NCBI GenBank assembly: GCA_004764695.1
Contig: SMSO01000031.1
Location: forward strand, 9,220,761-9,284,760
DNA from: Schizochytrium sp. TIO01
Lineage: Eukaryota > Protista > Bigyra: Labyrinthulomycetes
Reading direction: 5' to 3'
Length of the DNA: 64,000 nucleotides
Shown: positions 40,668 through 62,140 of the stretch, one piece after another
How positions within the stretch are numbered: the first letter of the stretch is position 1
Layout: each line of letters begins with the position of its first letter
Made by a program: the position numbers and the translations under genes
Notes under the pieces: generated by a model
Database searches by the model: none
The model's input: only the letters and a program-made list of their open reading frames with translations
What the model was told of the DNA's origin: nothing

Positions 40668-43600
40668 TCTGGGTGCGGGCCAGTTGTGTGGCCAGTTGCG
40701 TTTTACTTTGACAACGGTGAGTAAATACCTGCGCGTGGGGTAAGATAATTTTGAAGTCCTAGTAGCAGCAATATAATAATGGTAGTTCTACAAGTTATGT
40801 ACTACTACTAATACGAACACCTCCCTTCCTGGGCACATCTGCCATGCTGACGTGAACAACTCACAGACGGGGAGAGAACATAGGAGAGAACAGGCGAAAA
40901 TATGGGGGTAGATTCTTCTTCTCCTCACAAAAACATTGTGTTGGCGAATTTTCTGATATGCATTTTATAAGATAAATGGTTTTTACTGTGGGACCTGATA
41001 TGACATTTAGCTTTTAATCTAAAAATATTTATGAATTTTGTTACTGGTTTTATCAAGAACACACAGTGGGGACTCTCCTTTGTCTCCACTGAGAATAATT
41101 AAGTCTACTGCCACTGGGTCTCCTCACAAGGTATATACAATAGAGCTTTACAGTTGCACAATAACAATCATTGTATTTGTATATTTAAATCATACAGAAA
41201 CTAATACCAGACTATTCTCAACAATTGCGAACCTTGGCAAAGCGACCCAGGTTTCTGCGCTTGGACAATCAAAATGACGCGATATTAGACAAGTGAATGA
41301 AAGGCATTTAGGATAGAGAAGTATTTCCTGGTTTTGAGATATTGATTTAAAGACTTAATTACTTCATAAATGAATCATCAATCCAGGAAAGCAAGCAATT
41401 TTGAGCATATTCTCAAAACTTTCGGGATGAAGTAGGAGAAATGGTCTCAAGTTTAGAGGTACTCGATAACAACTAGTGCAAAACATCCACTCAACCCATC
41501 CAAACAGATTATTTGAGGTTCTTGCTTTATTTGCTTTACTGCTTTTAAGCATTTTGACAAAGGAACACACTTCAAGTTACTGATTCCTCTATAAATGGCC
41601 AGGTGATTCACAGCAGCTTCTGAACTTCAGTTGATATGAATATAATGTAGTCTCGGCCTCATTTTTATCTTATCTGTCATCCAAGTAGCTGGAGTATCAC
41701 TAGTATAGATTCTCGCATAAAGAGTTCGGAAGATGAAAGATCATACTAAGAAAACATGAAAATGACATGAACTGAGGCTCCTCGACGATTAGCAGCTGAA
41801 TGATATGCACGTGTTTGTGAGGAGGGATTCAAACTTGACACAATTAGCTTAACAGAATCGTCTAAAACACCCTTAGCTTGTTTTGAATAGTGCGATCATT
41901 ATGTCAGAAGGATAATATCTCACATGTGAAGAATGGCTTGAACCATTGGACTTCAAACTTGATAACCCATATCATGTTTCACTCTCAAAGCATACTATCA
42001 GTGCACCTCTAGCCTAGGCTGTGAGGTATGACTTTCAGACTGATCACGAAACCCAGAAGAAAGTAAAGTATGAATCATGGTAGAGTTTGAGAAAAGAGCT
42101 TTTCGTGAACCCGTGCGCGTTGGCTTCAACAAAACTAAGCTGGAGGATCTTCGCAACCAATAGTTTACTGGAGGGGATTGCGACTGCAATGGTGCAATTT
42201 AACGTAGGTGTGCTGCAGAGATCTTTGTGTGTTGGTTTTGCTGCAAACATTCACCTTAGCCAATGGTTTCACTTTCGTCCACGATTTCTTTTAGTTATTT
42301 TTGGTGAGCCAACCCACCTGAGACCACTTACACTTTGCTGAAATATATACCAACACACACGGGAACTGTATCAACCCTAAGGGTCCTACTTCCGAGCTTG
42401 GCGAGCTGTGCATAGAAACTCCCTGAAATCCATCAGCTATAAGCGAATATTATAGAGCATATAGGTTCTGTGACAACTTCGATCTGGATGTGTGACTGGT
42501 TGAACTATTTAAACCCGATGATTTAAGCGTTTATTACAGAAGCAAAATAGTGACTCACAGGAGCCACCCATCTGTTTGTGAGATCATGACAATTATTGCA
42601 CCAAAAATAAATGTTTTGTCTTTCTTTTCTTTTCATTTTTTTTTAAATCAATGTGATAGCACCAATAGCTATCATAGGAATAATCCCTTTTTCATTAAAA
42701 TAATGTGATGTACGTAGCTTTCCCACTCTCTCAAACTCAAAGACACTCTCGCTAGCTAATGGTTCTCCTATAATCCTGTTAATCCTGGGTAAGAACACAA
42801 GTCAAAGCATATATTATCTTAGTAGAAGGCTCACTATTTGGCCAAGGTACCTAGGGACTAAGTGCGACTGCAATCAAATTAAGATTTACTCTTTATTTAT
42901 TTGGTGTTATGATCATGATATTCAACCTTGAAAGAAAAAAAAAAAAAAGAGGTTTTTGCCAGAATATTAGAGGATTAAGTCATTAGTGCCAGCATATCAT
43001 CCGCTGTGAGTAGGTACTGTCGTCGTCATCGTGTAACACGGAAGAAATGTGGATGCTGCATAGAAAATCGATACACATGTCCACCCGTCGTTTATAAGGA
43101 AAGCAACTGTGGCCAGACTATATACCAATGCAGTGATTTTCCTTTATGAAGACCTAAAACCACTCAGGATTAGTATGTTGTTGAAATTAATATTAAATTG
43201 AAAAAATAAATAAAGATTTTAGAGTTTATAAATGAATATAATTATATATATTGTATAGAAGCAAACAACTCATACTGGGAAAGAATGCGTCTGCTGTTGG
43301 TATTGAAACGCAAAATTCTGCTCACTTGTCCGAGGTATTCCTACTTGGGAAACAACAGAACAGCTTCAAGGTTTGCAAAGTTTAATTCTTTAATTCACTC
43401 TAAAGGGAGTCGGAGGTGAAGTGATGAAACAAACAGAGGACTCTGAGAAGCGAGAATAATGACGTGAAACTAAGAATTGTTTACCCTGACACCAAACATC
43501 CAGTGCTTCCGAGACCTTGATCAACAGGAACAATAAACCTTACTATCTTAGACAGCAAACTAATATAGGCTTGCTATATATTTTCTGATCTAAAAGTTTC

Positions 43601-46034
43601 CGAAACTAGCTTATGATAGATCTGCGGCGTTGCCGGTAATCTATTTGAGAGCTAAAGGGAGAATTCTCTGAGATACTTACCAGAACAAAACTATAAAAGG
43701 ATCAACGTCGCTGTTATCGACTCCGACTTTTGCTAATAGCATGTTCATGATAAATGTCGAGATAGCTTGAAGTTTTTTGCAAAGCTTTTCTGGGATCAAG
43801 CAGTTTTTTAATCAATTTTTGCTATATCATGGGTAGGTAGGTAGTTGGTAAAGAGCAGGGCCTTACTCAATTAACTCTAGGCAAAACAATTAACTGGGCA
43901 ACTCATATCTTGAACCCTTTGACTTGGGTAGAAATCTAAGCCAAGCCAAAGTAATTGTCTGCAAATACCATGTAGGCGCCTTGGCTTTGCCATGAGATGA
44001 AATATTGATACCCAACCAAACTCTTCATGATCCTCACTCAGTAAGACTGATGATCCTCGCTCACTGACCTCAGCTTTGTCCGAAGTCAGAAGGCCGACAC
44101 GTTCTGCACCTTCCAAATTCACTCAGAAAACCTACTGGCTGGAAAGAAAGAACAAAGGTCTGAAGAGTTTGAATGAAAGATTCTTGGAACGGGCGGTCAT
44201 TGGTAGAAAAAAATAGTAGGTATCATTAGTGCATAGGCCCGTAGTACAGACCTACCATATAGACACCTTTAGTTTTTTTTAAAACAGTTTTTATTGTTAT
44301 TAATTTTATATACTTTTTAATTAAACTAATAACATATTGTCGCATATAATTACATTATATTCTTTAAAAGGCCTAGTCAAAAAGAAGGAGAAAAACTACC
44401 TTGGCAACTACTACCTAACTTGTGCTTTTCCTCTTTTCCTGACATAATGATTCTCTCATACATCATGTACTCTGTTCTATGTAGGTATGTTTAATACCAT
44501 AAGCAGTCGTTTTGAGCGTTTAGGTACCTATACATAGGGTACATATCGTTTCTGATAGTGTTTACCTATAGTACGTAGAGGTTTTCGTGCATAGTGAGTG
44601 CCTATGAATTCAGCCTGCTCCGGTACGTAGGTAGCAGTAGGCTTTCACTAACCTGCATTACTTTCCTCCTCTACTATTCTAAATCAGACATAGGATTATA
44701 CGTACTGGGTGCCTACTATTGTTGATCCTGGTAACTTGTATTCAGCAAAGGTAGTTGGCTTTCGGTTTGCTGGTGGACTATCTTAGTACATGCACAAAGC
44801 TTTCAAAAGTGATTGATTCAGCCTAAGCCACGCAAATTTACACTCTGTCCTCCTTACCTCCAGCTTGGTACCTATCCAAGTTGAACTTTCTACTCTCTGT
44901 AGCCCTGGAGTTGCAAGATAGATGGGCCTCAAGGTCAAACAACTTCAATAGTCACAGTGGTATGTACGTACCTAGGTCTGTATTTGTTTTAAAATCTTCG
45001 AACGACTTACCCACCATTGGCTCAAGCCAACCTCAACCCTCCGGGCTTTCTCGGCTCCATGGCCATCACAAATTTAATTCCTGATGATTGGCTCTTATCC
45101 TCTTATCTTACCTGAGACTTTCTCCTCTTCCTCTTACAAGTCTTCAACTTGGAAGGTTTTTACAACAGTATAGTTGCGCTCTTTCTCTTTTTTAAATCTT
45201 CTTTAAAGCTTTTTTCCTTTTCTTAGATGAAGTAGCCTTATAAAAATATATAGGCCTGTGTCTATAGAAATACATTTTATATTTTTTTAATACCAACGTA
45301 CCTAATACGTAGGTAGTAACTAGGAAGTACAAATATTGTATTTAAAAACTGCAGGTTTTCTCTCACCTGAGCCATGTTAAAAAATTAATTTGTCACCGTT
45401 CGGGCAACAAGACTTCAGGATATTTCCATGTTTGGGTAAGCTGCATGTGCTTCACACCTCTGCGTCAGACAAAAATCCAGCATTTCATCCTCTGGAGCGA
45501 TAAAAATGATAGAGATTTAAAGCTCTTCAATTATCTCAAAAGTGTGAGTAAGATAAAGTACCTGCTTCGAAGAGCACGAATTTGGACATTCTCTAAAAGA
45601 CACTGGCTGATAGATCCTCCGTAAAACCTGCGCATGTTCCGAGGCAATCCGATTATTCGCCCGGCAAACCCAAAGTCGAGGAATGTTTGAAATCGAAAAC
45701 GTTTATCCGAAAGAATGCTAAAACTTAGGCATGCCATAATAATAAAACATAATAGTATTTCTTTCTTTATAAAAATAAATAAATAAAAAAATAAAAAATA
45801 CAAACACAGATGCAAATGAAAAAAGGAAAAGAACATGAACATGAAAAGAAGCTAAAACCTAGGCTTGGAATAAGAGGACATTCACAAAGATCAATAGGAT
45901 GACTCAGCCTGAGCAAATAAAGAGCAAATATGTTTCTTTGATTGTGAAGTTTGTTTCCTGAAGCTTTAGAACCACTACATTGTATAATCTGAACGGCTAG
46001 GTACGATTACTAGTCGAAGTGACTTGAGCAATCA

Positions 46035-46077
46035 CCCAAATGATACCTTTTATTCATGATATAAATGAGATATTATA
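46035..46077 (+). mobile_element. Isolated left-end fragment of the IS607/Fanzor2 family
   Basis: cccaaatgataccttttattc is identical over 21 bp to 51191-51211. Similarity continues as atgatataaat..atattata after an 8-bp indel. Confidence 0.7.
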
Positions 46078-47447
46078 GTTTTCAAGGATAAAATAAATGC
46101 GTCATTATCGATCAACCAAGGATTTGAAAAGACAAACAAGCAACAAGATTCCGCCATTTCCGAATTCAGATTACCCGGCATCATCTTATCCTAATTACCT
46201 CCGTTCGTTACGATCGTTTAGATGGAGACTCTTGATTTGGCATGGCAGATGTTACATTCATTCTGAAGCAATGTCAACGAGGACCGAAAGGTGCTGCGCA
46301 TACATTCAATTCAAGTCATACTTACAAAGAGAAACAAATGGTACTCAGGGGCGATCAACATATTTCATGAGTCATGAATCCGTGGTGCACAAGAACTATC
46401 AATTTGAGATTATTTAGATTATGGTGGGACGGAGAATTGGTAATAATACCACGCTTTTCTCATCGTTCTCGTCTTCTATCTGAGCCACGGTAAATTAACT
46501 TTTGAGCTCATTTTTTTGCTTTTTTTTTTTTAATTCGATGAAAAATATATGTATTAAATATTTATCCCTGTTACATAGTAGCTCTCAGAGACGATGATGT
46601 AGATGTTAGTACCGACTATGATAGTTGTAAGTTTTTCTCTCTTTCTTTTTTAAAATTAAATCTTTTCACTAGTTTTTAAATTTGAAGGCATCAAAAGGGA
46701 AGCTTTTCTTTTCTTTTCTTTTTAACAATAAAACATGATACCAGGTCGGTTGCTGGCATTTCATCGATTAAGAAACTGCAAGGTCTAGGGGGGTTAGCCC
46801 GAATTGCGCGCCAATGAATGCAGTCGGCGTTCGGAGAGGTGCAGCTCATGCTTTTCTCTGTATTTAGGCATACCGTGACTCTTTGTAGCTTTGGGTCACT
46901 TGGAAATCCGCAGTTTAGTATTCACTTTACATGGAAATGATGGCCACGTGCTCCAAGAGCTGGTTTCGTAGGTGCCTCTAGGTACCTAATAGGATAAGAA
47001 AGAAAAAAAACCAAAAGAAAAGAAGAAACTCCGAATAGACTCACAAACCTTCACATTCTAGCGTTCCAAGTTTGAAGCTTTCTTCTTCAAAGAGGAGGCA
47101 ATAAAACGTGGCAAACTCTATCGTTGTTGAGATAAGCAAGTAAGCCCTCTAGACGTGTTTTCTTGATAAACAGTTGAATTTGATGGTGGTTATGAACACA
47201 GCCTACCTAGGTACGATCAGTGATACCTCGTGTATTTGAGACAACCAGGTATCTCTTGCGCTACCTATGTAGAATCGATTCCAGGCTTGGTCCTACTGAG
47301 AATGCCAGAGCTGGACATTGGTGCCTGTGGTCAGGTTATCAATCTAGAGACAATTTGTACATGCATCATAACTGATGTAGTAGTGAACGAAGTCTAAGGC
47401 GCCACATAAATGAACCAAGTCTGTGGCTATGGCGCGCAGCCGTAATA

Positions 47448-47475
47448 AGTGATTGTTTGGGCTTGAGTTTTTACC
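47448..47475 (+). repeat. Short dispersed repeat, copy 2 (first copy at 29777-29804)
   Basis: 26 of 28 identical to copy 1. Confidence 0.7.
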
Positions 47476-48903
47476 CAACTTGCTGAAAGGTTTTAGCTTA
47501 TTACTTGTGCGAGTGGCGTGAAAAAGCGGAGTGCCAGGAATGTGCTACACTCTGAAATGCAAGTTGCAGTAATAAGGTAGGTAGGTAGTAGGTAGGTAGG
47601 TAGGTAGGAGGTAGGCACTAAGTAGATATTTGACATCATGATGTAAAATCTGGTCTTTGTTATTACTATCTAAATAGTTGAGTTGTTTGCGAGTCTCTTC
47701 AGAGGCCAGTCTAAGAGTCATATTGGATTGGCCCTAGCCCTTCCAGAACTGAAGGGATAAATAATTCTATTAGTTGGCCTATGTAACTTAGACCAAAATA
47801 AACGATTTATTTTAGAGAGCATGAATCGCGTGGCATCGCTCATTCAGAACCATTAAAAAATCTTTCAAAGGAAAAGAGAAAGAGATGAAGAAAGGGAGAA
47901 GCGGAAAAAGGAGAATTAAAAGGCGCAGTTGCATCCCCGAACGAAGAACTTTGAAATTAATTCCACATCAGATTAATAAATATGTGGAAAAGTAGACTTT
48001 TACAGTGGGACTGGGCAGCATAATTGTGGAGCGTGCTCAATTGAAGCAGCAAATGCCATCTGCTTAATGATCCTGTATTTTGGTATAACCTAGTCGCCAG
48101 GGTTTGCTGAAAGCATTCTTTCGTATCGATGCATGCACAGCCTTTCGCAGACAATAATTTATGAGCAAGGTGTTTTTATTTCGTGCCGTTCAATTTTCCT
48201 AGGTTTACTTCTCTCTTTGTAAAAATGTATATAATGAAAATATTTTTTGTTTATTTTACTATTGAAGAATGACACGCGACCCCAAATAAACACATTTTCT
48301 CCAGGCACGGGCCATCTCTTCTCCTTCTTCAAAACAAAAAAAGATTTAAATGTATTTGCTTGCTTTGCAGTCAACTCTCGGTGCGGCCTCTTCTGCCAGG
48401 TCCTACACAGATGGGTAAGGGCAACTTGATTGAGGCAGCTTGTTGGGAATATTTCATAGACAAATACAAGCTCATAGACTCGCACTAAAAAATAATAGCT
48501 TTTAAACGACTGGTTGCTCACGGTATCTATTATTTATGATTTTATATATATGATAAGAAATAAACCTTTTCTATGTTGCAGTATCATATCATAAGACTGA
48601 TATTTTATATTCTTGCCACCTATTCTTGCTTAGAGGTAAAACCACTATACTTCAAAAAGCGACCTTTTCTTTATTTTTTCTTTCATTTTTCATTGTTTTA
48701 ATTTAATAAATAAAGAACTTTAATTAATAAATCTTGCAGTTGACTCAGGCAAGGATTTTTACTTTAAAAAATAATAATAAAATATTTAGATCGTGATTGG
48801 TACAAGTAGATAGTATTACATATATTCTTTTGCTCCACCAAACCATCTACCCCATATAGAAACATCAAAATTTTCTTCTGCGCATTTTTGCAATCCTTCG
48901 CAG

Positions 48904-48958
48904 GTAAGCAAACCCGCAACACCAATTTGCGCCCATTCAAATTGTCTAATACTATCAG
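48904..48958 (+). other. Probable 5'-UTR intron of the folate-receptor-like gene
   Basis: CAG|GTAAGC donor, CTAAT branch-like motif at 48946, and CAG acceptor ending 36 nt before the ATG. Confidence 0.55.
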
Positions 48959-48994
48959 TATTAGTGCTTCAAGTCAAGAACGATCGCTGGGACA

Positions 48995-49945
48995 ATGATT
49001 CAGCGTGGAGCCACCATCCTTCTGGTGCTCAGTGCGATACTTGCAAGCAGCCCAGTGTATGCTGAGGAATCAACTTGCAAGACTTTTGCTGACCTCTACG
49101 GCAATGGTCGCAACCTTTGCGAGAACCTTTTCAGTGGTGCCTTCAAGTATGTTCCCAAGAGCGACCCCGCCCACAAGTATGCCTACACCATGTGGTTCTT
49201 CGACACTGAAAACCCGAACGACAATGTGACAGCACTTCGTATTGAAGCTGGTCTCCACGACTCAGAATATGATGACACTGATGTATGCCACCTTCAGTAT
49301 GAAGACAATAGCCATGATGTTCCTCAGGCCAATCGCCAGCTCCCCGAGTGCAGTCCCTGGAACAGCAACTCATGCTGCACTCCGGATATTGTTCAGAGTC
49401 CCGAATACATGCGCGAAGCCTATGGTGCTGAGTTCAACTGGAACCGTTGTGGCACTCTGAGCCAGCAGTGTGAACGTTTCTTCGTTCAGGAGTACTGCCT
49501 TTACGAATGCGATGTGAACGCTGGTCTTTTTCGCAAGTATGCTCCGCACCTGAACTACACCAACAACCCAGATGCTAATGCCTGGGAGATGGAGGGTATG
49601 CCTATCAAGGGTGAATATTGCGATGCCTGGTACGAGGCTTGCCAGAACGACTACTTCATTTCTTGTAGCGACTCTGACAACGGCGACTGGTTTGCTTGCC
49701 CTTCTATTACCCCCGCAACCGAGGATGAGGAGGATCGTAGAATCTCCAAGGCATCTCTCGCTGTCATCATTGTCCTTGCGGTGCTTGCCTCTGGTGCTTG
49801 CTGCTGGACCTGCATGCTGATTCGCCGCGAGCGTATGGGCCAGCCGGTCTTTGCTCCTGAGAACTTTGATAAGATTGGCGAGAACAACAACCGCCCCTCC
49901 AACTCGGGTGAGGAATCTTCCCGCGGAAGCATCGCCATGACCTAA
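48995..49945 (+). CDS. Folate receptor/riboflavin-binding-protein family (FOLR-like) single-pass membrane protein; candidate thiamine or thiamine-precursor binding protein
   Basis: Signal peptide, then the folate-receptor cysteine pattern (ECSPWNSNSCC, FNWNRCGTLSQQCERFFVQEYCLYEC, PIKGEYCDAWYEACQND), a C-terminal TM helix and a short tail. Strong codon bias. Confidence 0.9.
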   Translation: MIQRGATILLVLSAILASSPVYAEESTCKTFADLYGNGRNLCENLFSGAFKYVPKSDPAHKYAYTMWFFDTENPNDNVTALRIEAGLHDSEYDDTDVCHLQYEDNSHDVPQANRQLPECSPWNSNSCCTPDIVQSPEYMREAYGAEFNWNRCGTLSQQCERFFVQEYCLYECDVNAGLFRKYAPHLNYTNNPDANAWEMEGMPIKGEYCDAWYEACQNDYFISCSDSDNGDWFACPSITPATEDEEDRRISKASLAVIIVLAVLASGACCWTCMLIRRERMGQPVFAPENFDKIGENNNRPSNSGEESSRGSIAMT

Positions 49946-50135
49946 ATCACCGCCTTGAAGTCCTCTCTTTTCTCCGAATCACGCTTTTCTTCGCGTGAAT
50001 GCCTCACAATCAGTTCTGTGACAGGCCATCAGTCAACATTCATTTTGCACGAACAACATTCGTGATGTTACATACATATATATACATACACCTACATTTT
50101 ATTTCGAATTGATCTCCAGATCGGAAATCAAGAGG

Positions 50136-50207
50136 TCGGGGGTGCGTCCATGCGTCGCTGAGATCATACCCTTTGAACCTGAACAGTCGTTAGTACCTGC
50201 GGAGGGA
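50136..50207 (+). promoter_or_regulatory. TPP (thiamine pyrophosphate) riboswitch aptamer in the 3' UTR of the FOLR-like gene
   Basis: tcGGGGGTGCgtccatgcgtcGCTGAGAtcATACCCtttGAACCTGAaCAGtcgtTAGTACCTGCGgAGGGA contains the THI-box hallmarks. These are P2 GGGU/ACCC, CUGAGA, GAACCUGA, P4 CCU/AGG, P5 CAG/CUG and GCG-N-AGGGA. It starts about 190 nt after the stop codon, on the same strand. Confidence 0.9.
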
Positions 50208-51339
50208 GAAGGTCGAATTTGTTAGGCTTTATAATACATGTCATTAGCTCGTGTATTATTGCTGGTAATTCAGCTAAGCTTGCACTTACAAATTCTGCCA
50301 CCTCTTGTGCTCTAATCTCGATAGTCATTACGAAGTAAATTCCTTTTCCATATTAACATTCCTGCCTACGCAATCCTTCTGCTCTAAACCATCTTCGCAG
50401 AAGGCATAATTGTTAGCGGCAAGATGAATGAATAAAAATCTTCAATGTCATCTCCAATTGCTGCCCAGTTTTTTTTCCAAATGCATAGTTTGAAATTACT
50501 CACGTACTTCTGTGCCATTAATCTTCTTGTATGCCGTCTTATCCATTTAATTGTTAAGACTTGAGTATTGATAAACTGCAAGCACTTTGCAGTCACTATT
50601 AAGTGAAGATCTCTCCAACCAGATGCCGTACAGAATTTGAAACCGTCCTACCGGAGGCCTTTTCTTTGTCGCGACAAAACAAGTGAATATTTTAGCTTGA
50701 GTTATTAAACAAAAGATTTCCAAATAAGTAAATAATGAGCCACCTCTAACTGGAGGATGTCACCGAGCGATAGAGTAGTAGCGAGAAATCCTGGTAACCT
50801 TGTGGGAGCTTGTGGGAGTTTGATTTCACTCTACTTGAATAGAAAAGGCATTCTTAATGTTCAACTTTCGGGAGGTTCGTGTTGTGCAACAGAATTCTAT
50901 TTTTTGTCTTACAGCTATGTTTTCAAATACGATTTTTCTAATGAAAATGTCCTAAACTGTGATTTCTTGAACTAAGAATTGGTGAAACATGTCATTGTCA
51001 ATCCCTTGTCTACAGCCTTGGACATGCTACCAATACTCGATACTCTGCCGTACTCCGTTATTTTACATATGAAAACTACTTGAGTCTTTACGATCTTTGC
51101 AAAACTCAAATTATACGAGACCATAAAAGTAGACTGCAGAACTCATCACCGCGGGATTCTGCACTTATGAAAACGTTAGAACTTAAAACCCCCAAATGAT
51201 ACCTTTTATTCCAGCCATCATGATATAAATTAAATATTATATTTTTGTTAGGTCTTTGTGGTCTTTGTTAAGAGGTATGAAAATGGCACAGCCCAGGAAC
51301 CACCAAGCTTGAAACACTACAAGTGAAGCAAACCTTTAA

Positions 51340-51626
51340 TTCAAATTATCAACCACAAGTTTGGCATCTCAGCAAGTGCCCTTCAGGTGCGTCCCCAGAG
51401 GCAAGTGCATATACGCAAGTGACGTTGTTGAGCGCATCTTTGGCTACTGTTCCGGAAGCCGCAAGAAACGCAGCATCCTACCATTATCTACGCTAGAGTC
51501 TCCTCCGTCAAGCAAAAAGAGAATCTCAAATGCCAGATTCGAGCCTACCCAGACACCTCCGCCGTCTACAAAGATATCGGTAGAGGGGCCAACTTCAACA
51601 CGCTGGGCTTGCGCGCCCTACTGGAC
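51340..51626 (+). pseudogene. tnpA: IS607 TnpA serine recombinase remnant (HTH plus N-terminal catalytic part)
   Basis: Reads ..PRGKCIYASDVVERIFG.. then, frameshifted, TIIYARVSSVKQKENLKCQIRAYPDTSAVYKDIGRGANFNTLGLRALLD. This matches YARVSS-x-x-Q-x-x-x-L and D-I-G-S-G-x-N-F-x-R-x-GL of IS607 recombinases. Confidence 0.85.
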
Positions 51627-51630
51627 TGCT

Positions 51631-52006
51631 GAAATCACCGCAAGCTTGCACTTTGGCTCCCGGCCGTGAAAACTAACGTGTTATAAATTTGAAACCTCCG
51701 ATGGTCAACAACTTAACAGGATGGATCAAAAGCAAGACAGTTCGAATGATGTGTTATTGGGGTCGTTTTAGCTTCCGTCAGGCGCTCATTCACAAAGCCG
51801 AACATTTAGCACGCCAGTGGCGAAAACTGGTTATTCTCCGAGAGGATTGTATTCCTAAATCATGCAATGAATGTGGTAGAATCCGCGACAAACTCGAAAC
51901 ATCGGAGGTTTTCAAATGGCCTTAAAACTGCAAACACGTAGTTAATCGTAATATCCACGCCGTCAAAGGCATCCATCTACACTACCTTTCCAAGGACACG
52001 ATTTAA
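51631..52006 (+). pseudogene. tnpB: Fanzor2/TnpB nuclease remnant (C-terminal portion with RuvC-II, zinc finger and RuvC-III region)
   Basis: HRKLALWL..KFETS..MV..IKSKTVRMMCYWGRFSFRQALIHKAE..VILREDCIPKSCNECG..SEVFKWP*NCKHVVNRNIHAVKGIHLHYL. This matches the Fanzor2 pattern SKTAR-x-M-x-x-W-x-H-x-x-FRQ..E-x-YTSKTC-x-x-CG..F-x-C-x-x-C..DRD-x-NAA-x-NILLRYL, with stops and frameshifts. Confidence 0.88.
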
Positions 52007-53801
52007 GAATTTTGTTTGAGTCACAGGTTAGCTTTCGCGATTGGGCCTTGTCACCATTGGAAATGCAAAATTTGATAGGTTAATTTCTAAGTGACTACTA
52101 ACAGTATAAGCCTACTAGGATTGAATCCAGAAGCTGGATCAATTTTAATGCTTTTATTTGATAAACAACCCTGATGTCATGAAGGATCCCTGAGTAGTTC
52201 TTCCACCAAATCATCGGTTTGAAGTTCACGTTTACTAAATACGTGTAGTCCTATCGTCATTAAGAAGTAAGAAGAGAAGGGGCAAGAGCGATAAATTATG
52301 GAGAGGGTATTTATATACTATCAGGTAAATATGGAGTTAAATGGGAGTGTCTTTCGACAGTGTGCACATGTGTAAATGTTGGTTTTCATTAAGATCTCTG
52401 TTGCTGGATATGAAACACTCTATCATGCAATTTCGGTAGTTCGTGGACTTCATTCGATGCGTAAGTTTTATTTCCTCGAGTCAAATTCTTCGCGCGGACT
52501 CGAAGCAAACCCATCAATAAGACTGTCTCAACCATTGGACCGCTCTAACTCAACTATGAAGATCAGACATAGTGCTGATGCAAGTTGATGACACGAATAC
52601 AGTTCAACATTAACTTTGGTTTTGATACGCTCATTAGAATGATTAATTCGTATTTATTGTGAAAACCTTGAAACAAAGATCCAATGGCCGTGCTGCTCGA
52701 TACTGTAGAAGACAGCCTTAGCTCAGTCGCGGCAGTTTAGCAGATTTCATCATCATCAATCGTTTGTTAGATGCTCACCTACTTGCGATCAAGATGAACA
52801 ACAACAATAACCACCGATAAGTCGTTTCAAAATAAATAAATAATTATTATATTTATATAATATGACTATCCAGAATGGCGTGCCAGGTGTTGTCGCCAGC
52901 GAGAAGGTAACACAAGATCAGGCATGAACCACATATGTTCTCCTAACCCTGGAAACTTGCAGCTGTACTAAAGCAGGACTCTGAAGAAACCTTCCCTGCA
53001 AATGCTCATATGCTTTTTTGCCTTTTCAAATCGTTTCTAATTAAAAAAAATGATCTGCAACATATAACAGCAACCTGCTGCCTCAATTTTGCCTTTTTGA
53101 GACACCTTGGTACTCGTACGCAAAGTCACCGTCGTGAATAAATGCTAGGTGCTAGCAGAGCAAAGACAAATGAAAAGAAGCATCGTTTCTTGAGCAAAAT
53201 GCGAAAAATTGTTCCAACTACTACCTACCTGCCCTAGCTACTACTAGGTAGAATATACTCGGGTGTCCGATCAGGGCAAGATAAGTATCGGATATCGACT
53301 GGACCCAGAGGGTTGCGACCATGACAGCTATAGAGATTGCCAACCTGATCAAACCAGGGAAGCAAAGATCCCCAAATACGGGTTTCTGTTTCTTTGTTTT
53401 TTTGTAACAAAGTACCGCGTACCTGGGTCTTTCTATTGGTGTCAAACACAGAAATGCTAGCAACCCCTTTTTGCCCTAGGTTTTTTCCTAACCATGACAA
53501 AAATCACATTTTGGCATTAGTGTATTGCTAGGTTGTTGCAATAAGACTAATTCTTTCTTCTGATCTGATTTCTGCACAAGCATATAGATCGTACGGTACT
53601 TAGTACGAGTACTTACGTAGAAACATCATAGCTTAATTGATGAAAGTCAAGCATCGATCCTCTTTCGTTTAGTAATCGTAGGTAGTACAGCTAGTACCCT
53701 TTTTTTAAAATGAAAAAGCATTTGGCGAAGACCAAAGCGATACAACAACTCGCTCGCGCGCAGCAAGAGGGGAACGAACCCTTCGTGCTCTCACAAGACC
53801 C

Positions 53802-56800
53802 ATGGTCCAGGGAAACACAACTCAGAAGCACCTTTGGGACCCTTCACTCCTGGGGTGTGGCACAGAAGTTACTCCTGCCCAACAATATGTGGCGCGGAAT
53901 TGTGCATTGAGGTCTCGCCTTGCGGCACGTGTCCATATTGAATCTGTGCAAAGACAGCAAGTCTGCGAAAGTATACGTAACACTACCCTTTGGAAGAGAT
54001 CAGGAGGCACGCAAAGGCTCCCTCAACATCGCTCTCCACAGAGCCCAGACCTGATCACGTGCTCCTCTGGAGGCAACGTATTGATGTCTTCTTCTCTCTC
54101 TTTCCTTCAAAGTACCCTATCACGTGTTGGTCAAAACAAACTGATACAGATGCAGATACAGTCAAACAAAGACCCTTGGGAACAGCAGCAACAACAGCAC
54201 TCTTCTTTGTTAAGACGGCCATGTGAGGAAACCAATTCTTACTCAAATAGGAGTTCAAATCATCACAAGAGGAGACCACACTATGCTCGTGTTTCGGTCA
54301 TCACAATAATAACTGTAATACTGCTCTTCTGGCACCCAGGTGCGATTTGCGCGTTTACAAACGAAGGTGACCAACGTGCATATGCAAATTTTGTTCTGCA
54401 TATGAGCGCTGGAGGAGAAACCGGTATGTACTTCAATTATTGTAGTGATCAAAACACAGTCAATGATCCATGCTCGTGCAATATAAATGGACGTCAGATT
54501 GTATGTAATGAAGAAGGTAGAATTCAAGAGATCCATTTGCCAGAAAACAGTCTTTATGGAAATCTTTCTCCAGATATCTTGAATATGTTTACTCAACTCC
54601 ATGCTTTAAATCTCTCGTCCCTGACAACAAATTCAGCGCATCGTAATTTGCTGAAAGTTTCTAGCGCAGAGGTGAATTGTACTAACCTTTCCAAGTGCCT
54701 TGATGGTAGTTGGACTTGCGATTTTTCCGGGAGTGATCTACGCATGTGCTCTACTAAGAGTTCGTCTTCAAATCTACCTCAGAATAAAACTAAGGCGTCC
54801 TTTGAATGTGCATACGACGGCTATCTTATTACAGAAAGTACAAATGGAGGCGAGATGCCATTGAACATAAAAGATGTTGCTTCTGCGCAACACTGCTGGA
54901 ATCTCTGCACCAAGTATAGTTTCTGCCTTTTCTTTTCCTTTTCACCGTATGGAAACACAGCCGGTACTTGTCTTCTGCACAGCCGGCTTGGAGACATTCA
55001 ATCTAATAGTAAATGGTTGTCTGGGTCGAAGACTTGCGATGACATTTTCTTCTCCAGATCTACCTCTTCAATTCCGGCAAGTAAAAGCGCCGATCAAGCT
55101 ATTTCAGCTGCGACTCCTACTCGCAGAGCTGTCCAAGCTCTGGATGACTGCTACACCGAAGGTTACCGCTACGTTCGCACAGGCTCTCAGCCTATTGCAA
55201 CTGAGACTACAGATCCAGATGTAGCCTCTTGCCAGAATGTTTGCCTGACGAACTCAGATTGTTTGTATTTTGCTATAAAAGTCTCGGGTAATAGCAATGC
55301 TGGTCAATGTGAGTTGTTCTCTGATATATCAGCAGGTGTCACTGAGGCATCCAATTGGGATCTGGGCCCTCGAAGCTGTTCATCGTCTACCCCTACATCT
55401 ACTCCTACTGACGTACCAACTACCGCAGCTTCGCCAACTAAAGAGCCTACTACAAGTCCTACCGAATCATGTTTTACAGAAGGTTTTCGGTTTGAGCGTA
55501 CAGATGCTCAACCTTTTCTCACTGAAACAACTGACCCTGATGCTGATTCTTGCCAAGCGCTATGCGAAACAAATGATTCATGTCTGTACTTCGCTGTCAA
55601 GGTTTCAGGAAATAGCAACGAAGGCCAGTGCGAACTGTACTCCGATATATCGGCAGGCACTGTAGAAGCATCCAACTGGGTACTTGGACCACGTACATGT
55701 GCCGGAACAACTGCATCTCCCACGGTCTCTCCCACACCATATCCGAGTATAGCAATAAGTGCCCCGACCACTGGTACTGTAGCACCAACGTCAGACTCTG
55801 CAAGCAGTCCCACAATTGCCCCTACCTCGAGTCCAACAGAATGTTTTACAGAAGGTTTTCGGTTTGAGCGTACAGATGCTCAACCTTTTCTCACTGAAAC
55901 AACTGACCCTGATGCTGATTCTTGCCAAGCGCTATGCGAAACAAATGATTCATGTCTGTACTTCGCTGTCAAGGTTTCAGGAAATAGCAACGAAGGCCAG
56001 TGCGAACTGTACTCCGATATATCGGCAGGCACTGTAGAAGCATCCAACTGGGTACTTGGACCACGTACATGTGCCGGAACAACTGCATCTCCCACGGTCT
56101 CTCCCACACCATATCCGAGTATAGCAACAAGTGCCCCGACCACTGGTACTGTAGCACCAACGTCAGACTCTGCAAGCAGTCCCACAATTGCCCCTACCTC
56201 GAGTCCAACAGAATGTATTACAGAAGGTTTTCGCTTTGAGCGTACAGATGCTCAACCTTTTCTCACTGAAACAACTGACCCTGATGCTGATTCTTGCCAA
56301 GCGCTATGCGAAACAAATGATTCATGTCTGTACTTCGCTGTCAAGGTTTCAGGAAATAGCAACGAAGGTCAGTGCGAACTGTACTCCGATATCTCGGCAG
56401 GCACTGTAGAAGCATCCAACTGGGTACTTGGACCACGTACATGTGCCGGAACAACTGCATCTCCCACGGTCTCTCCCACACCATATCCGAGTATAGCAAT
56501 AAGTGCCCCGACCACTGGTACTGTAGCACCAACGTCAGACTCTGCAAGCAGTCCCACAATTGCCCCTACCTCGAGTCCAACAGAATGTATTACAGAAGGT
56601 TTTCGCTTTGAGCGTACAGATGCTCAACCTTTTCTCACTGAAACAACTGACCCTGATGCCGATTCTTGCCAAGCGCTATGCGAAACAAATGATTCATGTC
56701 TGTACTTTGCTGTCAAGGTTTCAGGAAATAGCAACGAAGGTCAGTGCGAACTGTACTCCGATATATCGGCAGGCACTGTAGAAGCATCCAACTGGGTACT

Positions 56801-59800
56801 TGGACCACGTACGTGTGCCGGAACAACTGCATCTCCCACGGTCTCTCCCACACCATATCCGAGTATAGCAACAAGTGCCCCGACCACTAGTACTGTAGCA
56901 CCAACGTCAGACTCTGCAAGCAGTCCCACAATTGCCCCTACCTCGAGTCCAACAGAATGTATTACAGAAGGTTTTCGGTTTGAGCGTACAGATACTCAGC
57001 CTATCGACACGGAGACTACTGACCCTGATGCTGATTCTTGCCAAGCGCTATGCGAAACAAATGATTCATGTCTGTACTTCGCTGTCAAGGTTTCAGGAAA
57101 TAGCAACGAAGGTCAGTGCGAACTGTACTCCGATATATCGGCAGGCACTGTAGAAGCATCCAACTGGGTTCTTGGTGTAAGGGAATGTGCAAGCACAACA
57201 ATCCCAAGTAGTATACCGACACAAGCGCCTACCTTGAGCCCGACAGCTGGAGAAAACACAACGCGGTCTCCGTCTGTAACAATGAGTCCAACAACGCCCT
57301 CACCAACAGCGTTGCCCACTGAGTGCTACACTGACGGCTATCGCTTTGAGCGAACAGATACTCAACCAATTGACACTGAGACAACATCACCAGATGCTGA
57401 TTCTTGCCAAGCTTTATGCCAGAGCAATGCCAATTGTCTTTACTTCGCTGTTAAGGTTTCGGGAAATAGCAACGAAGGTCAGTGCGAACTGTACTCCGAT
57501 ATATCGGCAGGCACTGTAGAAGCATCCAACTGGGTTCTTGGTGTAAGGGAATGTGCAAGCACAACAATCCCAAGTAGTATACCGACACAAGCGCCTACCT
57601 TGAGCCCGACAGCTGGAGAAGACACAACGCGGTCTCCGTCTGTAACAATGAGTCCAACAACGCCCTCACCAACAGCGTCGCCCACTGAGTGCTACACTGA
57701 CGGCTATCGCTTTGAGCGAACAGACACTCAACCAATTGACACTGAGACAACATCACCAGATGCTGAGTCTTGCCAAGCTTTATGCCAGAGCAATACCAAT
57801 TGTCTTTACTTCGCTGTAAAGGTATCAGGAAACAGTAATGATGGCCAGTGCGAGTTATATTCTGATATTTCTTCTGGACTAACAAGTGCAAGTAATTGGG
57901 TTTATGGACCACGCACATGTGGAACTAGTGCCCCTACATCAGGATCGCCTTCATCCACACCTACTCAAACCCCAACAAGTGGACCAACAAGGGCCCCATC
58001 TGCAGCTCCTACACTTTGCATCATCGAAGGCTACCGTCTTGAACGAACAGACACACAACCCTTTACTACTACTACAACGGATCCAACCGCTAGTGCTTGT
58101 CAAAGCGAGTGCGTCTCAGTAGACGGGTGTATTTATTTTGCTGTGAAGGTTTCAGGAGATAGTAATACTGGTCAGTGTGAGCTCTACTCTGATATAAGTG
58201 CCGGGATCGTTGAAGCTCCGAATTGGGTTTACGGCCTTGGCGAATGTGGTGGCCCGACGGCAACTCCAACGAGTTCTCCAACCACCTGTTTTTTTACTGA
58301 TATGACATACACTGGTGAGGTGATAGAGGAGCTTACGAGTATTGCATCATCTACGGAATGTCAAGATGAGTGTGTTACTGTAGATGAATGCTATTACTTT
58401 ACGTTTAAGTACCAAGGCGACAATAATGGCACATGTATTCTCCTTTCCGCTGTAAATGTGACCCTTACAGGCGAAGATAACTACGAATCTGGCCCTAAGG
58501 TGTGTGGAATGTCCCTTGCTCCTACATTAGCTCCTACAAATCGACCTGTGACCTCCACTGCGCCTACTCCTACCCAGACCCCAACGGTTTCGACGACCAA
58601 TCCTACTAGTTCACCTACATCTGCCCCTGTAACTCTATCTTCAGATCAGTCAGAGGCATGGACAAACATGTACGATGACTTGAGCGGGTCTAATTGGGTG
58701 GCATGCACATCAGACGAGAACCCATGTAATGACCCTTCTTGCTCAACATCTTCAGGAAATATCCAAAGATATGTTTCTTGCTCAGTGCAAGAAGATCAGC
58801 GGCGTTTAATTAGACGTAGTCGACGCTTCCTTCAAAGCTCCAGTTCCCCAAGTAGCATTACGGCAATAGTTCTTCCTCTGAACGGGATGGAAGGATTGCT
58901 TACGAAAGATACCCTTGATGCGTGGACTAGCCTTGAGGTGCTGAACTTGACTGGTAATGATATCACTGGGGATGGCCCAAACGACTGTATCGATGCACAG
59001 CTTTGCTACGAATCAGGAGTTGTTTGCGACGTGCCAAGTTTATGTGGAGAAATGTATTCTGTAAATTCTGATGGATCATCAGAATGGACACCGGTCAACT
59101 CGACATCTGACTCATATTCAACGCTTGATGTCTCGACGGGAGAATCAGTTCTGTTTGAGTTCTCAAATTCGAGTAATGTGGTTCGACTAGCCTCTCTAGA
59201 TGCATATGAGAGTTGTAATTTTACGGACTCTACCTTGCTAGCAGGCTCAAGTGAAGGTTCGTACCGTTTTGTAGCAGATCAAGAAGATGAAGGCAAAACA
59301 GTCTATATCACGAGCTCGCTTCCAGTAGGAAGCCATGCTAACTGTAAAAATGGACAACGGATTGCAATCCGAGTTGCAAGCGTGAGCACTAGCGCCCCAA
59401 CAACAAGTGGTGGCGACACGTCGGACGATAGCTCCAAAGCTAATGGATCTGGCATCAACTGGATTTGGCTTATTATTATTATCCTCCTTGTAGTTCTTTG
59501 CGGACTTCCTTGTGTAATACTATCTACAATTCTTTGTATGGGTAGATTCTGTCCAGGCAGTCTTCCTGGTTGTATCCAAGCCCCACTGGATCGGTGCCTG
59601 CTAGGCTCAAGAAGTAATTCTTTAGGAAGGAAGAACTTTGATTCAATGTTGCCTTATACAAGCTCAGAAGCTAGCACTGCTTCTCCAAGTGGGGCCGGTG
59701 GATCTATTTCGCTTTCGCCTATTTCAACAGGTAGCCATCAAAGAGCACAACAAATTAAAGAATCTGAAGATGACAGGCTTGATAATGGATCAGCATTCTC

Positions 59801-61878: not shown

Positions 61879-62010
61879 GAAGACGTGCAGTTTACAGTCA
61901 CTGTATTGCCTTCGCCCGTCTGCAATGTCAACTTAGTAAACTTGTAGGTATAATGCTTTACTAATGGGCCTAGAAAGCGGATGAAGTATCACCTACATCC
62001 TAGTACCTAC

Positions 62011-62140
62011 TAATACAAATTCGCACACCACACTTAGGATTTAACCAATAAAATTTGCAAAACTTGCATTTCTAATAGTGACATGGGCTAAGGCCCAATC
62101 GCGGGTTGAAAACTAACCCGCGACTCAAAGATAATTCTTA
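62011..62140 (-). ncRNA. Putative omegaRNA (Fanzor2 guide-RNA scaffold plus flank-derived guide) at the right end of copy C
   Basis: Between the Fanzor stop and the conserved end lie a perfect 9-bp stem (62099-62107 / 62115-62123), a UGGGC/GCCCA hairpin (62084-62097) and a UGCAA/UUGCA hairpin (62056-62068). Homology among the three copies stops at CTAAGTG. Confidence 0.6.

What the first reader, a model, noticed from the sequence alone, without database searches (positions are those of the whole stretch)
50100..50220. Eukaryotic TPP riboswitch in the 3' UTR of a folate-receptor-family gene
Seen: a near-canonical THI-box (GGGGUGC..GCUGAGA..AUACCC..GAACCUGA..CAG..CUGCG.AGGGA) about 190 nt downstream of the stop of a FOLR-like membrane protein, on the same strand. 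Known: TPP is the only riboswitch class established in eukaryotes. FOLR-like genes with TPP aptamers have been noted in some marine algae, but their ligand is not established. Inference: this heterotrophic protist uses a folate-receptor fold to capture thiamine or a precursor (HMP or thiazole), with vitamin B1 feedback through the 3' UTR.
Basis: partly seen in the sequence, partly recalled or inferred. Interest (0 to 1): 0.85.

Follow-up and report, generated by a model that had tools for sequence, protein, structure and literature searches.

The report
Vitamin B1 riboswitch behind thiamine-receptor-like gene
A real vitamin-B1-sensing RNA element sits in the tail of the messenger RNA of a folate-receptor-like membrane protein in a marine protist that cannot make B1; the gene-and-sensor pairing is already known from marine algae, but here it marks the protein as part of the uptake system for intact thiamine.

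Summary
Window 50128-50224 (+) matches Rfam TPP (RF00059) at 51.6 bits. That is 2.7 bits under the gathering score, but E = 8e-8 for the whole 64-Mb genome. It lies 183 nt after the stop of a 316-aa Folate_rec (PF03024) membrane protein. RNA contigs from four studies place it inside that transcript (about 48901-50457).

The pairing is not new. This gene family was named ATS1 in Micromonas and noted in diatoms. Here, 58 of 80 environmental ATS1-like loci carry a same-strand TPP aptamer.

Four things are added here:
- The host is a thraustochytrid-like heterotroph with no ThiC, THI4, THI5, ThiD, ThiE or ThiM, but with thiamine pyrophosphokinase.
- The genome has exactly two aptamers. The other follows an SLC19-type (thiamine/folate carrier) gene.
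- Both aptamers lack an adjacent P1. A conserved block about 165 nt downstream supplies it, with one compensatory change.
- The protein keeps FOLR1's aromatic clamp and acidic residue but lacks the other folate contacts.

Thiamine-responsive regulation is inferred, not shown, and similar 3'UTR aptamers in diatoms were unresponsive. Verdict: new member of a known kind, moderately interesting.

The parts
48995..49945 (+). CDS of a 316-aa ATS1-type folate-receptor-family membrane protein (signal-like N-terminus, permuted FOLR domain, one TM helix at about residues 252-280, short conserved cytosolic tail)
   Evidence: ORF. PF03024 at 3e-29. 100 relatives, all PF03024. Alignment A1 with an invariant Cys framework. 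AF2 model has a helix at 252-280.
48901..50457 (+). Transcribed unit as seen in assembled RNA contigs. The flanks 47574-48882 and 50566-51126 are uncovered.
   Evidence: in 4 runs from 4 studies, contigs cover 48901/48920/48937-50195 and 50166-50440..50457, with no joints inside. The strand is inferred from the ORF and the poly(A) signal.
49946..50457 (+). 3'UTR of about 510 nt
   Evidence: Stop at 49943-49945. Contig ends at 50440-50457. No + strand ORF of 60 aa or more in this stretch.
50128..50224 (+). TPP (THI-box) aptamer match, RF00059 positions 1-105
   Evidence: 51.6 bits, E 3.2e-9; E 8.1e-8 genome-wide; pattern occurs twice in the genome, control 0.
50138..50172 (+). Pyrimidine-sensor arm. 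P2 is GGGG 50138-41 with CCCU 50169-72. P3 is short: 50144-48 with 50154-58, 5 bp including one U.U. The CUGAGA motif is at 50158-63. There is no P3a.
   Evidence: CM alignment. P2 covaries across 44 aptamers (CG 33 / GC 11 at one pair; GC 27 / CG 14 / UA 3 at the next).
50176..50207 (+). Pyrophosphate-sensor arm P4/P5 (GAACCUGA ... GCG GAGGGA) with a 2-nt bulge (UC) in P5
   Evidence: CM alignment. P5 pairs show compensatory changes in A2.
50129..50136 (+). P1 5' strand, CAAGAGGU (preceded by GGA 50123-25)
   Evidence: no complementary sequence directly after the aptamer (-0.1 kcal/mol, weakest of 44). It pairs with 50300-50307 in the MFE and centroid folds and in RNAalifold.
50208..50299 (+). 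About 90-nt insert between P4' and the remote P1 strand. It begins with the conserved GAAGGU and contains a hairpin, AUAAUACA..UGUAUUAU. Its sequence is not conserved in the paralogous UTR except GAAGGU and UCUGC.
   Evidence: Pairwise UTR alignment A3; folds.
50300..50313 (+). Remote P1 3' strand, ACCUCUUG (50300-07), plus UCU (50311-13) pairing with GGA. It is part of a block conserved with the SLC19-like gene's UTR (CTTGTGCTCTAA).
   Evidence: The G:C pair in the window is A:U in L002, a compensatory change.
50431..50436 (+). AAUAAA poly(A) signal just before the contig ends
   Evidence: Sequence; contig ends at 50440-50457.

Best explanation
The element is a genuine TPP-binding aptamer embedded in the roughly 510-nt 3'UTR of an ATS1-type folate-receptor-fold membrane protein. 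The host is a thraustochytrid-like protist that is a complete thiamine auxotroph.

The genome holds only one other TPP aptamer. It is almost identical and sits in the 3'UTR of an SLC19-type carrier gene. The two genes together most likely form the cell's thiamine acquisition system. In this reading, the surface protein captures intact thiamine and the carrier moves it across the membrane. Thiamine pyrophosphokinase then makes TPP, and TPP feeds back on both mRNAs.

The aptamer has an unusual build. Its closing helix P1 is not adjacent. The 5' strand (50129-36) pairs with a conserved block about 165 nt downstream (50300-07), enclosing the sensor arms and a roughly 90-nt insert.

The inferred mechanism is that TPP binding locks this large 3'UTR domain and changes the fate of the mRNA (stability, 3'-end processing or translation), lowering expression when B1 is plentiful.

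Shown: the aptamer, its transcription within the mRNA, the gene family, the missing biosynthesis pathway, the second aptamer, and the widespread ATS1-aptamer linkage.

Inferred: TPP binding, the protein's ligand, the remote P1, and the direction and mechanism of regulation.
For: Aptamer:
- RF00059 at 51.6 bits, E 8e-8 genome-wide.
- Only two motif hits in 64 Mb, with none in the control.
- The two copies are near-identical across the core, while P3 differs in length and pairing and the flanks are diverged.

Transcription: gene-limited RNA contigs in 4 studies cover 48901-50457. Contig depth is similar before and after the aptamer. A loose end at 50213 continues into the paralogue's flank, so that UTR is expressed too.

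Linkage:
- 58 of 80 environmental ATS1-like loci have a same-strand RF00059 hit at E<=1e-3, 38 of them over the gathering score.
- P2 and P5 show compensatory covariation.
- The 5' versus 3' position of the aptamer follows the protein tree.
- Micromonas ATS1 rises 80-fold without thiamine (PMC4260697).

Auxotrophy:
- No ThiC, NMT1 or ThiM was found.
- The 'Thi4' hits are only dinucleotide-binding motifs.
- The 'ThiE' hit is a nitronate monooxygenase/FabK-like protein.
- The 'ThiD' hit is pyridoxal kinase.
- TPK scores 106.7 bits.
- Thraustochytrid B1 auxotrophy is reported in the literature (PMC12734794).

Carrier: PF01770. Its best solved relative is thiamine transporter 2, 5.7e-12.

Pocket: FOLR1 D81 maps to the invariant E166, Y85 to the invariant Y170, and W171 to an aromatic residue (F46). 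R103, R106 and S174 are not conserved. The loop with H135, K136, W138 and W140 is absent (residue roles from PMC9055165).

Remote P1.
Against: - No ligand binding or thiamine response was tested.
- The match is below Rfam's gathering score.
- The aptamer alone does not fold better than shuffles (z +1.4).
- The remote P1 rests on two sequences and one compensatory pair. As an isolated duplex it is not rare (17 of 300 shuffles reach it), and L002 has an equally good alternative partner.
- All characterised eukaryotic TPP riboswitches act through alternative splicing, yet no spliced form appears in the contigs.
- Diatom 3'UTR aptamers of similar context did not regulate expression (PMC9544697).
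- The absence of pathway genes comes from six-frame searches and could miss non-homologous enzymes.
Confidence: 0.6

Rival explanations
1. The aptamer is conserved and may bind TPP, but it does not act as a thiamine-responsive gene switch in this organism. This is what was reported for 3'UTR aptamers of diatom THIC and SSSP. Its conserved role would then be something else, or unknown.
For: PMC9544697 found no change in transcript level, splicing or polyadenylation, and no reporter response, for predicted 3'UTR aptamers in a fellow stramenopile. In the window no alternative isoform is seen, and contig depth is the same upstream and downstream of the aptamer.
Against: The two copies keep an identical core while their flanks diverged. 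The only two aptamers in 64 Mb both sit on candidate thiamine-uptake genes. Micromonas ATS1, which has a riboswitch, responds strongly to B1 deprivation (PMC4260697). Contigs cannot report levels or rare isoforms.
Confidence: 0.25
2. Mechanistic variant: TPP controls splicing of a cryptic 113-nt intron in the 3'UTR. The 5' site would be GAAG|GU at 50211|50212, with a branch-like CUCUAAU at 50310-16 and the 3' site AUAG| at 50324. When free of pairing with the P2' strand CCUUU, the 5' site is used. The resulting exon junction about 266 nt after the stop sends the mRNA to nonsense-mediated decay.
For: GAAGGU, CUCUAA and YAG|(G)UCAUU are conserved at matching places in both aptamer-bearing UTRs, although the sequence between them is not. 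RNAalifold pairs GAAGG with CCUUU of the aptamer. All characterised eukaryotic TPP riboswitches use splicing (PMC9544697). A decay-targeted isoform would be rare in steady-state RNA.
Against: No joint within 48900-50457 appears in contigs of four runs, and the paralogue's contig also reads through its GAAG|GU. Beyond GU, the putative 5' sites (GUCGAA, GUUGGG) match the usual GURAGU poorly. The branch-to-AG distance is very short.
Confidence: 0.15
3. The protein captures a thiamine precursor or breakdown product (HMP, thiazole or related) rather than thiamine.
For: Many marine protists use pyrimidine precursors, and Micromonas ATS1 rose even more in precursor-only treatments (PMC4260697).
Against: This genome has no detectable ThiD, ThiE, ThiM, ThiC, THI4 or THI5 with which to use precursors. 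ATS1-bearing Micromonas likewise lack THIM and TH1 (PMC4260697).
Confidence: 0.06
4. The protein is an ordinary folate (or riboflavin) receptor and the aptamer downstream is unrelated to its ligand.
For: It is a Pfam Folate_rec member, and its best solved relatives are FOLR1/2, Juno and riboflavin-binding protein.
Against: Most FOLR1 folate contacts are missing. The linkage to TPP aptamers holds in 58 of 80 loci across deep clades. The divergent, non-ATS1 FOLR paralogue in the same genome has no aptamer.
Confidence: 0.03

Closest known systems
ATS1 (Algal Thiamine Sensitive 1) with its TPP riboswitch, Micromonas RCC299 and other algae (McRose et al. 2014, PMC4260697)
   Same: Same protein family (PF03024, signal peptide). 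The TPP aptamer lies in a UTR of the same transcript; it is in the 3'UTR in Micromonas clade A/B. The gene is intronless. The host lacks TH1 and THIM. The ligand is unknown.
   Different: The host here is a non-photosynthetic thraustochytrid-like protist lacking the entire pathway. P1 is remote instead of adjacent. The aptamer is duplicated onto an SLC19-type carrier gene rather than UNK1 or SSS genes. No expression data under B1 limitation are available here.
Diatom FOLR-domain genes with predicted 3'UTR TPP aptamers (Halamphora, Fistulifera; Llavero-Pasquina et al. 2022, PMC9544697)
   Same: Stramenopile host, 3'UTR location, no obvious splice acceptor in P2, and a predicted signal peptide. 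Receptor-mediated thiamine uptake has been proposed.
   Different: Diatom aptamers have GCGG-type P2, a P3a stem and an A-rich adjacent P1. The window has GGGG-type P2, no P3a and a remote P1. Diatoms make thiamine; this organism cannot.
Plant THIC 3'UTR TPP riboswitch (Wachter et al. 2007, as summarised in PMC9544697)
   Same: The aptamer is in the 3'UTR and is expected to give negative feedback by TPP on mRNA fate.
   Different: The plant switch works through a 3'UTR intron and loss of a poly(A) signal. Here no splicing is seen and the gene is for uptake, not synthesis.
Human folate receptor alpha/beta (4LRH, 4KMY), riboflavin-binding protein and Juno
   Same: Same cysteine-rich fold (profile E 4.6e-28). 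The equivalents of the D81/Y85/W171 acidic-plus-aromatic clamp are retained as E166/Y170/F46.
   Different: The domain order is circularly permuted. The protein is anchored by a TM helix with a cytosolic tail instead of GPI. The pterin O4 and glutamate-tail contacts (R103, R106, H135, S174, W102, K136, W138, W140) are not conserved or are absent.
SLC19A2/A3 thiamine transporters versus the SLC19A1 folate carrier
   Same: The second aptamer-bearing gene is PF01770, and its best solved match is thiamine transporter 2. As in SLC19, a 'folate' family would contain thiamine-specific members.
   Different: The match covers only the N-terminal half confidently, and specificity cannot be read from the sequence. 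No TPP aptamer on an SLC19 gene was found in the searched literature.

Membership tests
TPP riboswitch aptamer (Rfam RF00059) | Statistically significant full-length covariance-model match | tested here: met
   51.6 bits, model positions 1-105, E 3.2e-9 local and 8.1e-8 for the genome.
TPP riboswitch aptamer (Rfam RF00059) | Score at or above Rfam's curated gathering cut-off (54.3 bits) | tested here: not met
   2.7 bits short. The deficit coincides with three non-pairs in the model's adjacent P1 and a U.U in P3. 20 of the 58 ATS1-linked environmental hits are also below the cut-off.
TPP riboswitch aptamer (Rfam RF00059) | Pyrimidine-sensor arm: P2, P3 and the CUGAGA junction | tested here: met
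   GGGG/CCCU form P2, P3 has 5 bp, and CUGAGA is at 50158-63. These columns are invariant in 44 aptamers and P2 covaries.
TPP riboswitch aptamer (Rfam RF00059) | Pyrophosphate-sensor arm: P4/P5 with ACCUGA ... GCG ... AGGGA | tested here: met
   alignment, with a 2-nt bulge in P5 shared with the paralogue. P5 covaries.
TPP riboswitch aptamer (Rfam RF00059) | P1 helix closing the three-way junction | tested here: inconclusive
   The adjacent P1 is absent (-0.1 kcal/mol, weakest of 44). A remote 7-8 bp helix (50129-36 with 50300-07) forms in the MFE, centroid and alifold predictions of both UTRs, with one compensatory pair. As a lone duplex it is reached by 17 of 300 shuffles.
TPP riboswitch aptamer (Rfam RF00059) | Binds thiamine pyrophosphate | not testable with these tools
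   Needs in-line probing, ITC or similar.
Eukaryotic TPP riboswitch acting by alternative splicing | Ligand-dependent use of splice sites in or next to the aptamer | tested here: not met
   No joints within 48900-50457 in contigs of 4 runs. Contigs drop rare forms, so a minor or unstable isoform is not excluded.
ATS1 / folate-receptor family (PF03024) | Pfam Folate_rec match over the cut-off with the conserved cysteine framework | tested here: met
   102.5 bits against a cut-off of 29.8. 15 invariant Cys columns in A1.
ATS1 / folate-receptor family (PF03024) | TPP aptamer in a UTR of the same transcript | tested here: met
   Also met in 58 of 80 environmental relatives.
ATS1 / folate-receptor family (PF03024) | Induced by thiamine deprivation | not testable with these tools
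   Shown only for Micromonas RCC299 (PMC4260697).
Functional folate receptor (FOLR1/2-like ligand binding) | Conservation of the folate-contact residues D81, Y85, W171, R103, R106, H135, S174, W102, K136, W138, W140 | tested here: not met
   D81 maps to E166, Y85 to Y170 and W171 to F46, so these are kept in kind. S174 maps to A49, R103 to N195 and R106 to E198. The 133-144 loop is unaligned or absent (residue roles from PMC9055165). The alignment near R103/R106 borders a gap and is less certain.

The most novel reading that the evidence does not exclude
The two thraustochytrid aptamers would be a new architectural and mechanistic variant of the eukaryotic TPP riboswitch. It would be a split-P1, four-way-junction sensor spanning about 190 nt of an intronless 3'UTR that acts without alternative splicing. 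It would co-regulate a receptor-plus-carrier thiamine uptake pair. In that pair a circularly permuted folate-receptor fold (ATS1) would be the first identified eukaryotic cell-surface thiamine receptor.
Probability: 0.3. Interest if true: 0.8.

Novelty: new member of a known kind. Interest (0 to 1): 0.55.

Why it matters
The ligand and role of ATS1/FOLR-like proteins are open questions. These proteins are among the most common riboswitch-linked genes in marine protist transcriptomes. The mechanism of 3'UTR TPP aptamers in intronless stramenopile genes is also open.

This organism offers an unusually clean test case:
- It is a culturable heterotroph with defined-medium B1 auxotrophy.
- It has no biosynthesis or salvage genes to confound the result.
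- It has exactly two aptamers, on a receptor-like gene and a carrier-like gene.

Uptake assays, knock-outs and 3'UTR reporters here could settle what ATS1 binds. They could also show whether a eukaryotic riboswitch can work without splicing. That bears on how vitamin B1 is scavenged in the ocean.

Tried and rejected
- The default Rfam scan at gathering threshold was blank. The hit appeared only with the E-value threshold.
- Folding the aptamer alone gave no signal (z +1.38), so I do not use thermodynamic stability as evidence.
Orthologous 3'UTRs from Hondaea and other named thraustochytrids therefore could not be fetched.
- All 24 sequencing runs found hold near-identical sequence, at least 95% of words, and give no divergent orthologue.
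- The candidate ThiE and ThiD hits were checked and rejected. They are a nitronate monooxygenase/FabK-like protein and pyridoxal kinase. The Thi4 hits are only N-terminal dinucleotide-binding motifs.
- A Foldseek search of the AF2 model (pLDDT 70) gave only weak FOLR-family rows, E about 0.3. The fold assignment therefore rests on sequence profiles.
- A shuffle test of the remote P1 duplex alone was weak.
- Scoring RF00059 on the aptamer with the 90-nt insert removed would need a joined sequence.
- A search of earlier scan notes for riboswitch/TPP/thiamine found nothing. Nearby notes concern IS607/Fanzor relics and have no bearing.
- Complex prediction was not used, because no protein-protein binding is claimed.
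Full report
**1. Observation**

The sequence at 50128-50224 (+) matches the Rfam TPP model over its whole length at 51.6 bits. E is 3.2e-9 in a 600-nt scan and 8.1e-8 for the whole 64-Mb assembly.

The score is 2.7 bits below the curated gathering score, so the default scan returned nothing. A strict THI-box pattern occurs exactly twice in the genome and never for the reversed control pattern.

The upstream ORF on the same strand (48995-49945) is a 316-aa Folate_rec protein (PF03024, 3e-29). The aptamer match begins 183 nt after its stop codon.

**2. Is it in the transcript?**

Twenty-four public runs hold this stretch. I laid four of them, from four studies, on 47200-52800.

- The runs are labelled only 'RNA?'. 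However, their contigs cover only 48901/48920/48937 to 50195 and 50166 to 50440-50457.
- Nothing covers 47574-48882 or 50566-51126. That is the pattern of transcripts, not of genomic DNA.
- The 30-nt overlap at 50166-50195 is a graph break caused by the paralogous aptamer. One contig leaves the window at 50213 and continues with the sequence that follows the other aptamer, so that UTR is expressed too.
- An AAUAAA sits at 50431-36, just before the contig ends.
- No joints occur inside the unit.
- No + strand ORF of 60 aa or more lies between the stop and 50757.

The aptamer is therefore in a roughly 510-nt 3'UTR. Contigs cannot show rare isoforms or expression levels.

**3. The organism and its thiamine metabolism**

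The nearest named homologue of the protein is from the thraustochytrid Hondaea fermentalgiana, at 67% identity.

Six-frame Pfam searches of the whole assembly gave the following:

| Family searched | Result |
|---|---|
| ThiC | none |
| NMT1/THI5 | none |
| ThiM | none |
| Thi4 | only dinucleotide-binding-motif hits in unrelated long ORFs |
| ThiE | one hit that is really a nitronate monooxygenase/FabK-like protein |
| ThiD | one hit that is pyridoxal kinase (TIGR00687, 234.6 bits) |
| Thiamine pyrophosphokinase | present, 106.7 bits |

The cell can therefore only import thiamine and pyrophosphorylate it. This agrees with the reported B1 auxotrophy of thraustochytrids (PMC12734794, citing Tani 2018 and Goldstein & Belsky 1963). 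It makes a precursor ligand pointless for this organism.

**4. A second aptamer**

The only other RF00059 hit in the genome is at G000:C34:1963685-1963787 (= L002:1501-1603), at 48.6 bits. It lies about 175 nt after the stop of a 430-aa ORF of the reduced-folate-carrier/SLC19 family (PF01770, 5.7e-23).

The best solved relative of that ORF is thiamine transporter 2, at 5.7e-12, against about 5e-9 for the folate carrier. The next gene is convergent, so this aptamer is also in a 3'UTR.

The two aptamers are almost identical from GGAAA to GAAGGU. They differ in the length and pairing of P3, and the surrounding UTRs do not align. That pattern argues for selection on the core.

**5. Comparative support**

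I scanned JGI metagenome and metatranscriptome contigs with a profile of the protein family. It returned 80 loci.

- RF00059 hits at E<=1e-3, always on the gene's strand, occur in 58 of them, and 38 exceed the gathering score.
- 45 hits lie upstream of the CDS and 13 downstream.
- In an alignment of 44 aptamers, P2 and P5 show compensatory covariation.
- On a quick ML tree of the proteins, the 5'UTR type falls on one side of a single branch. Most 3'UTR types form another clade (0 of 500 shuffles are as clustered). The window groups, without strong support, with L009 (53% identity, 3'UTR aptamer) and with contigs whose UTRs are too short to judge.

The linkage itself is published. The family was named ATS1 in Micromonas, where its mRNA rises 80-fold on B1 deprivation (PMC4260697). 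FOLR-domain genes with aptamers were noted in two diatoms (PMC9544697). In labyrinthulomycetes, only an SSSQ-linked riboswitch in Aplanochytrium was reported (PMC4260697). I found no paper on a thraustochytrid or SLC19-linked aptamer.

**6. Anatomy of this aptamer**

P2, P3 (short, 5 bp with one U.U), CUGAGA, P4/P5 and the GCG..AGGGA motif are in place. P3a is absent, as in many family members.

The unusual point is P1. Among 44 aptamers, the window has the weakest complementarity between the 5' flank and the sequence directly after AGGGA (-0.1 kcal/mol). L002 is third weakest.

Instead, the 5' strand CAAGAGGU (50129-36) is the exact complement of ACCUCUUG at 50300-07. That sequence lies inside the only other block conserved between the two UTRs. 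In L002 the strands are CAAGAAG and CUUCUUG, so a G:C pair has become A:U.

Unconstrained MFE and centroid folds of both UTRs form this helix, and so does RNAalifold. They also form an outer GGA:UCU extension. The relative L012 uses the same two strands as a normal adjacent P1. L009 also has an adjacent P1.

I read this as a lineage-specific insertion of about 90 nt between P4' and P1'. The support is modest. It rests on two sequences and one compensatory pair, and the duplex on its own is reached by 17 of 300 shuffles.

The conserved GAAGGU right after the aptamer can pair with CCUUU of the P2' strand. It could be part of an expression platform. Together with CUCUAAU and AUAG| it could also outline a 113-nt intron, but nothing in the RNA contigs supports splicing.

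**7. The protein**

Profile and single-sequence comparisons with solved structures show that the family is a circular permutant of the animal FOLR domain. Residues 26-80 align with FOLR residues about 146-200. Residues 113-235 align with FOLR about 24-138.

The chain numbering printed by the tool coincides with the published FOLR1 numbering, because W102, R103 and R106 fall where expected. Using it, FOLR1's contacts (roles from PMC9055165) map as follows:

| FOLR1 residue | Role in FOLR1 | Window protein |
|---|---|---|
| D81 | H-bond to pterin | E166 (invariant) |
| Y85 | stacks on pterin | Y170 (invariant) |
| W171 | stacks on pterin | F46 (aromatic in most members) |
| S174 | H-bond to pterin | A49 |
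| R103 | H-bond to pterin | N195 |
| R106 | H-bond to pterin | E198 |
| H135, K136, W138, W140 | pterin H-bond (H135) and glutamate-tail contacts | loop absent |

A carboxylate plus an aromatic clamp would suit an aminopyrimidine or thiazolium ring. That is an inference.

The family also shares a TM helix and a conserved cytosolic motif, RE(R/K)xGxPxF. A second, very divergent and non-permuted FOLR-like gene in the genome has no aptamer and lacks E166/Y170.

**8. Verdict**

The element is a real TPP aptamer in the 3'UTR of an ATS1-type gene. It is a new member of a known kind.

Its value lies in the context: a complete B1 auxotroph, only two aptamers (one on a receptor-like gene and one on a carrier-like gene), and an apparently split P1. 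Whether and how it regulates expression is unproven. The negative results for diatom 3'UTR aptamers (PMC9544697) are a serious rival.

Two steps were not possible. Re-scoring the aptamer with the insert removed was left out because it would need a joined sequence.

Noticed in passing
G000:C34:1963685-1963787 (L002:1501-1603); ORF L002:33-1325: The genome's only other TPP aptamer (48.6 bits) lies in the 3'UTR of an SLC19/reduced-folate-carrier-family gene. Its best solved relative is thiamine transporter 2. No SLC19-linked TPP aptamer was found in the searched literature.
   Followed up: partly
window 48995-49945 (protein residues 26-80 and 113-235): The ATS1-type family is a circular permutant of the animal folate-receptor domain. 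Its N-terminal segment aligns with the C-terminal part of FOLR1/2, and the remainder aligns with the N-terminal part of FOLR1/2.
   Followed up: partly
window 49829-49870 (protein residues about 279-292): A cytosolic motif just after the TM helix, RE(R/K)xGxP(V/L/M)F, is conserved from protists to amphioxus homologues. It may be a sorting or endocytosis signal.
   Followed up: no
loci L008-L087 (JGI metagenome/metatranscriptome contigs): 58 of 80 ATS1-like loci carry a same-strand TPP aptamer: 45 in the 5'UTR and 13 in the 3'UTR. The position follows the protein phylogeny. This is far wider than the handful of cases described in the two papers read.
   Followed up: yes
proteins P0019, P0024, P0028: Amphioxus (Branchiostoma) encodes ATS1-type homologues with a TM helix and the same tail motif, at 36-40% identity. 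The subfamily is therefore not confined to protists.
   Followed up: no
G000:C13:1891523-1891873 (L006:1156-1995, - strand): A second FOLR-family gene (279 aa, 23% identity, ordinary domain order, with signal peptide and TM helix). It has no aptamer and lacks the E166/Y170 equivalents.
   Followed up: partly
window 42000-57000: This is a gene-poor neighbourhood. There is no ORF of 150 aa or more between 42000 and 48995. The next large ORF is a 2241-aa protein with PAN domains at 53802-60527. Earlier scan notes place IS607/Fanzor relics at 51161-52093 and about 62000-62900.
   Followed up: no
window 50343: A C>G difference in 3 of 4 RNA runs, downstream of the remote P1 strand. It is the only variant seen in the transcript among the laid runs.
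   Followed up: no
window 50060-50100: An AT-rich ACATA/TATA low-complexity run just upstream of the aptamer gives weak chance matches to several miRNA models (E about 2-10).
   Followed up: no
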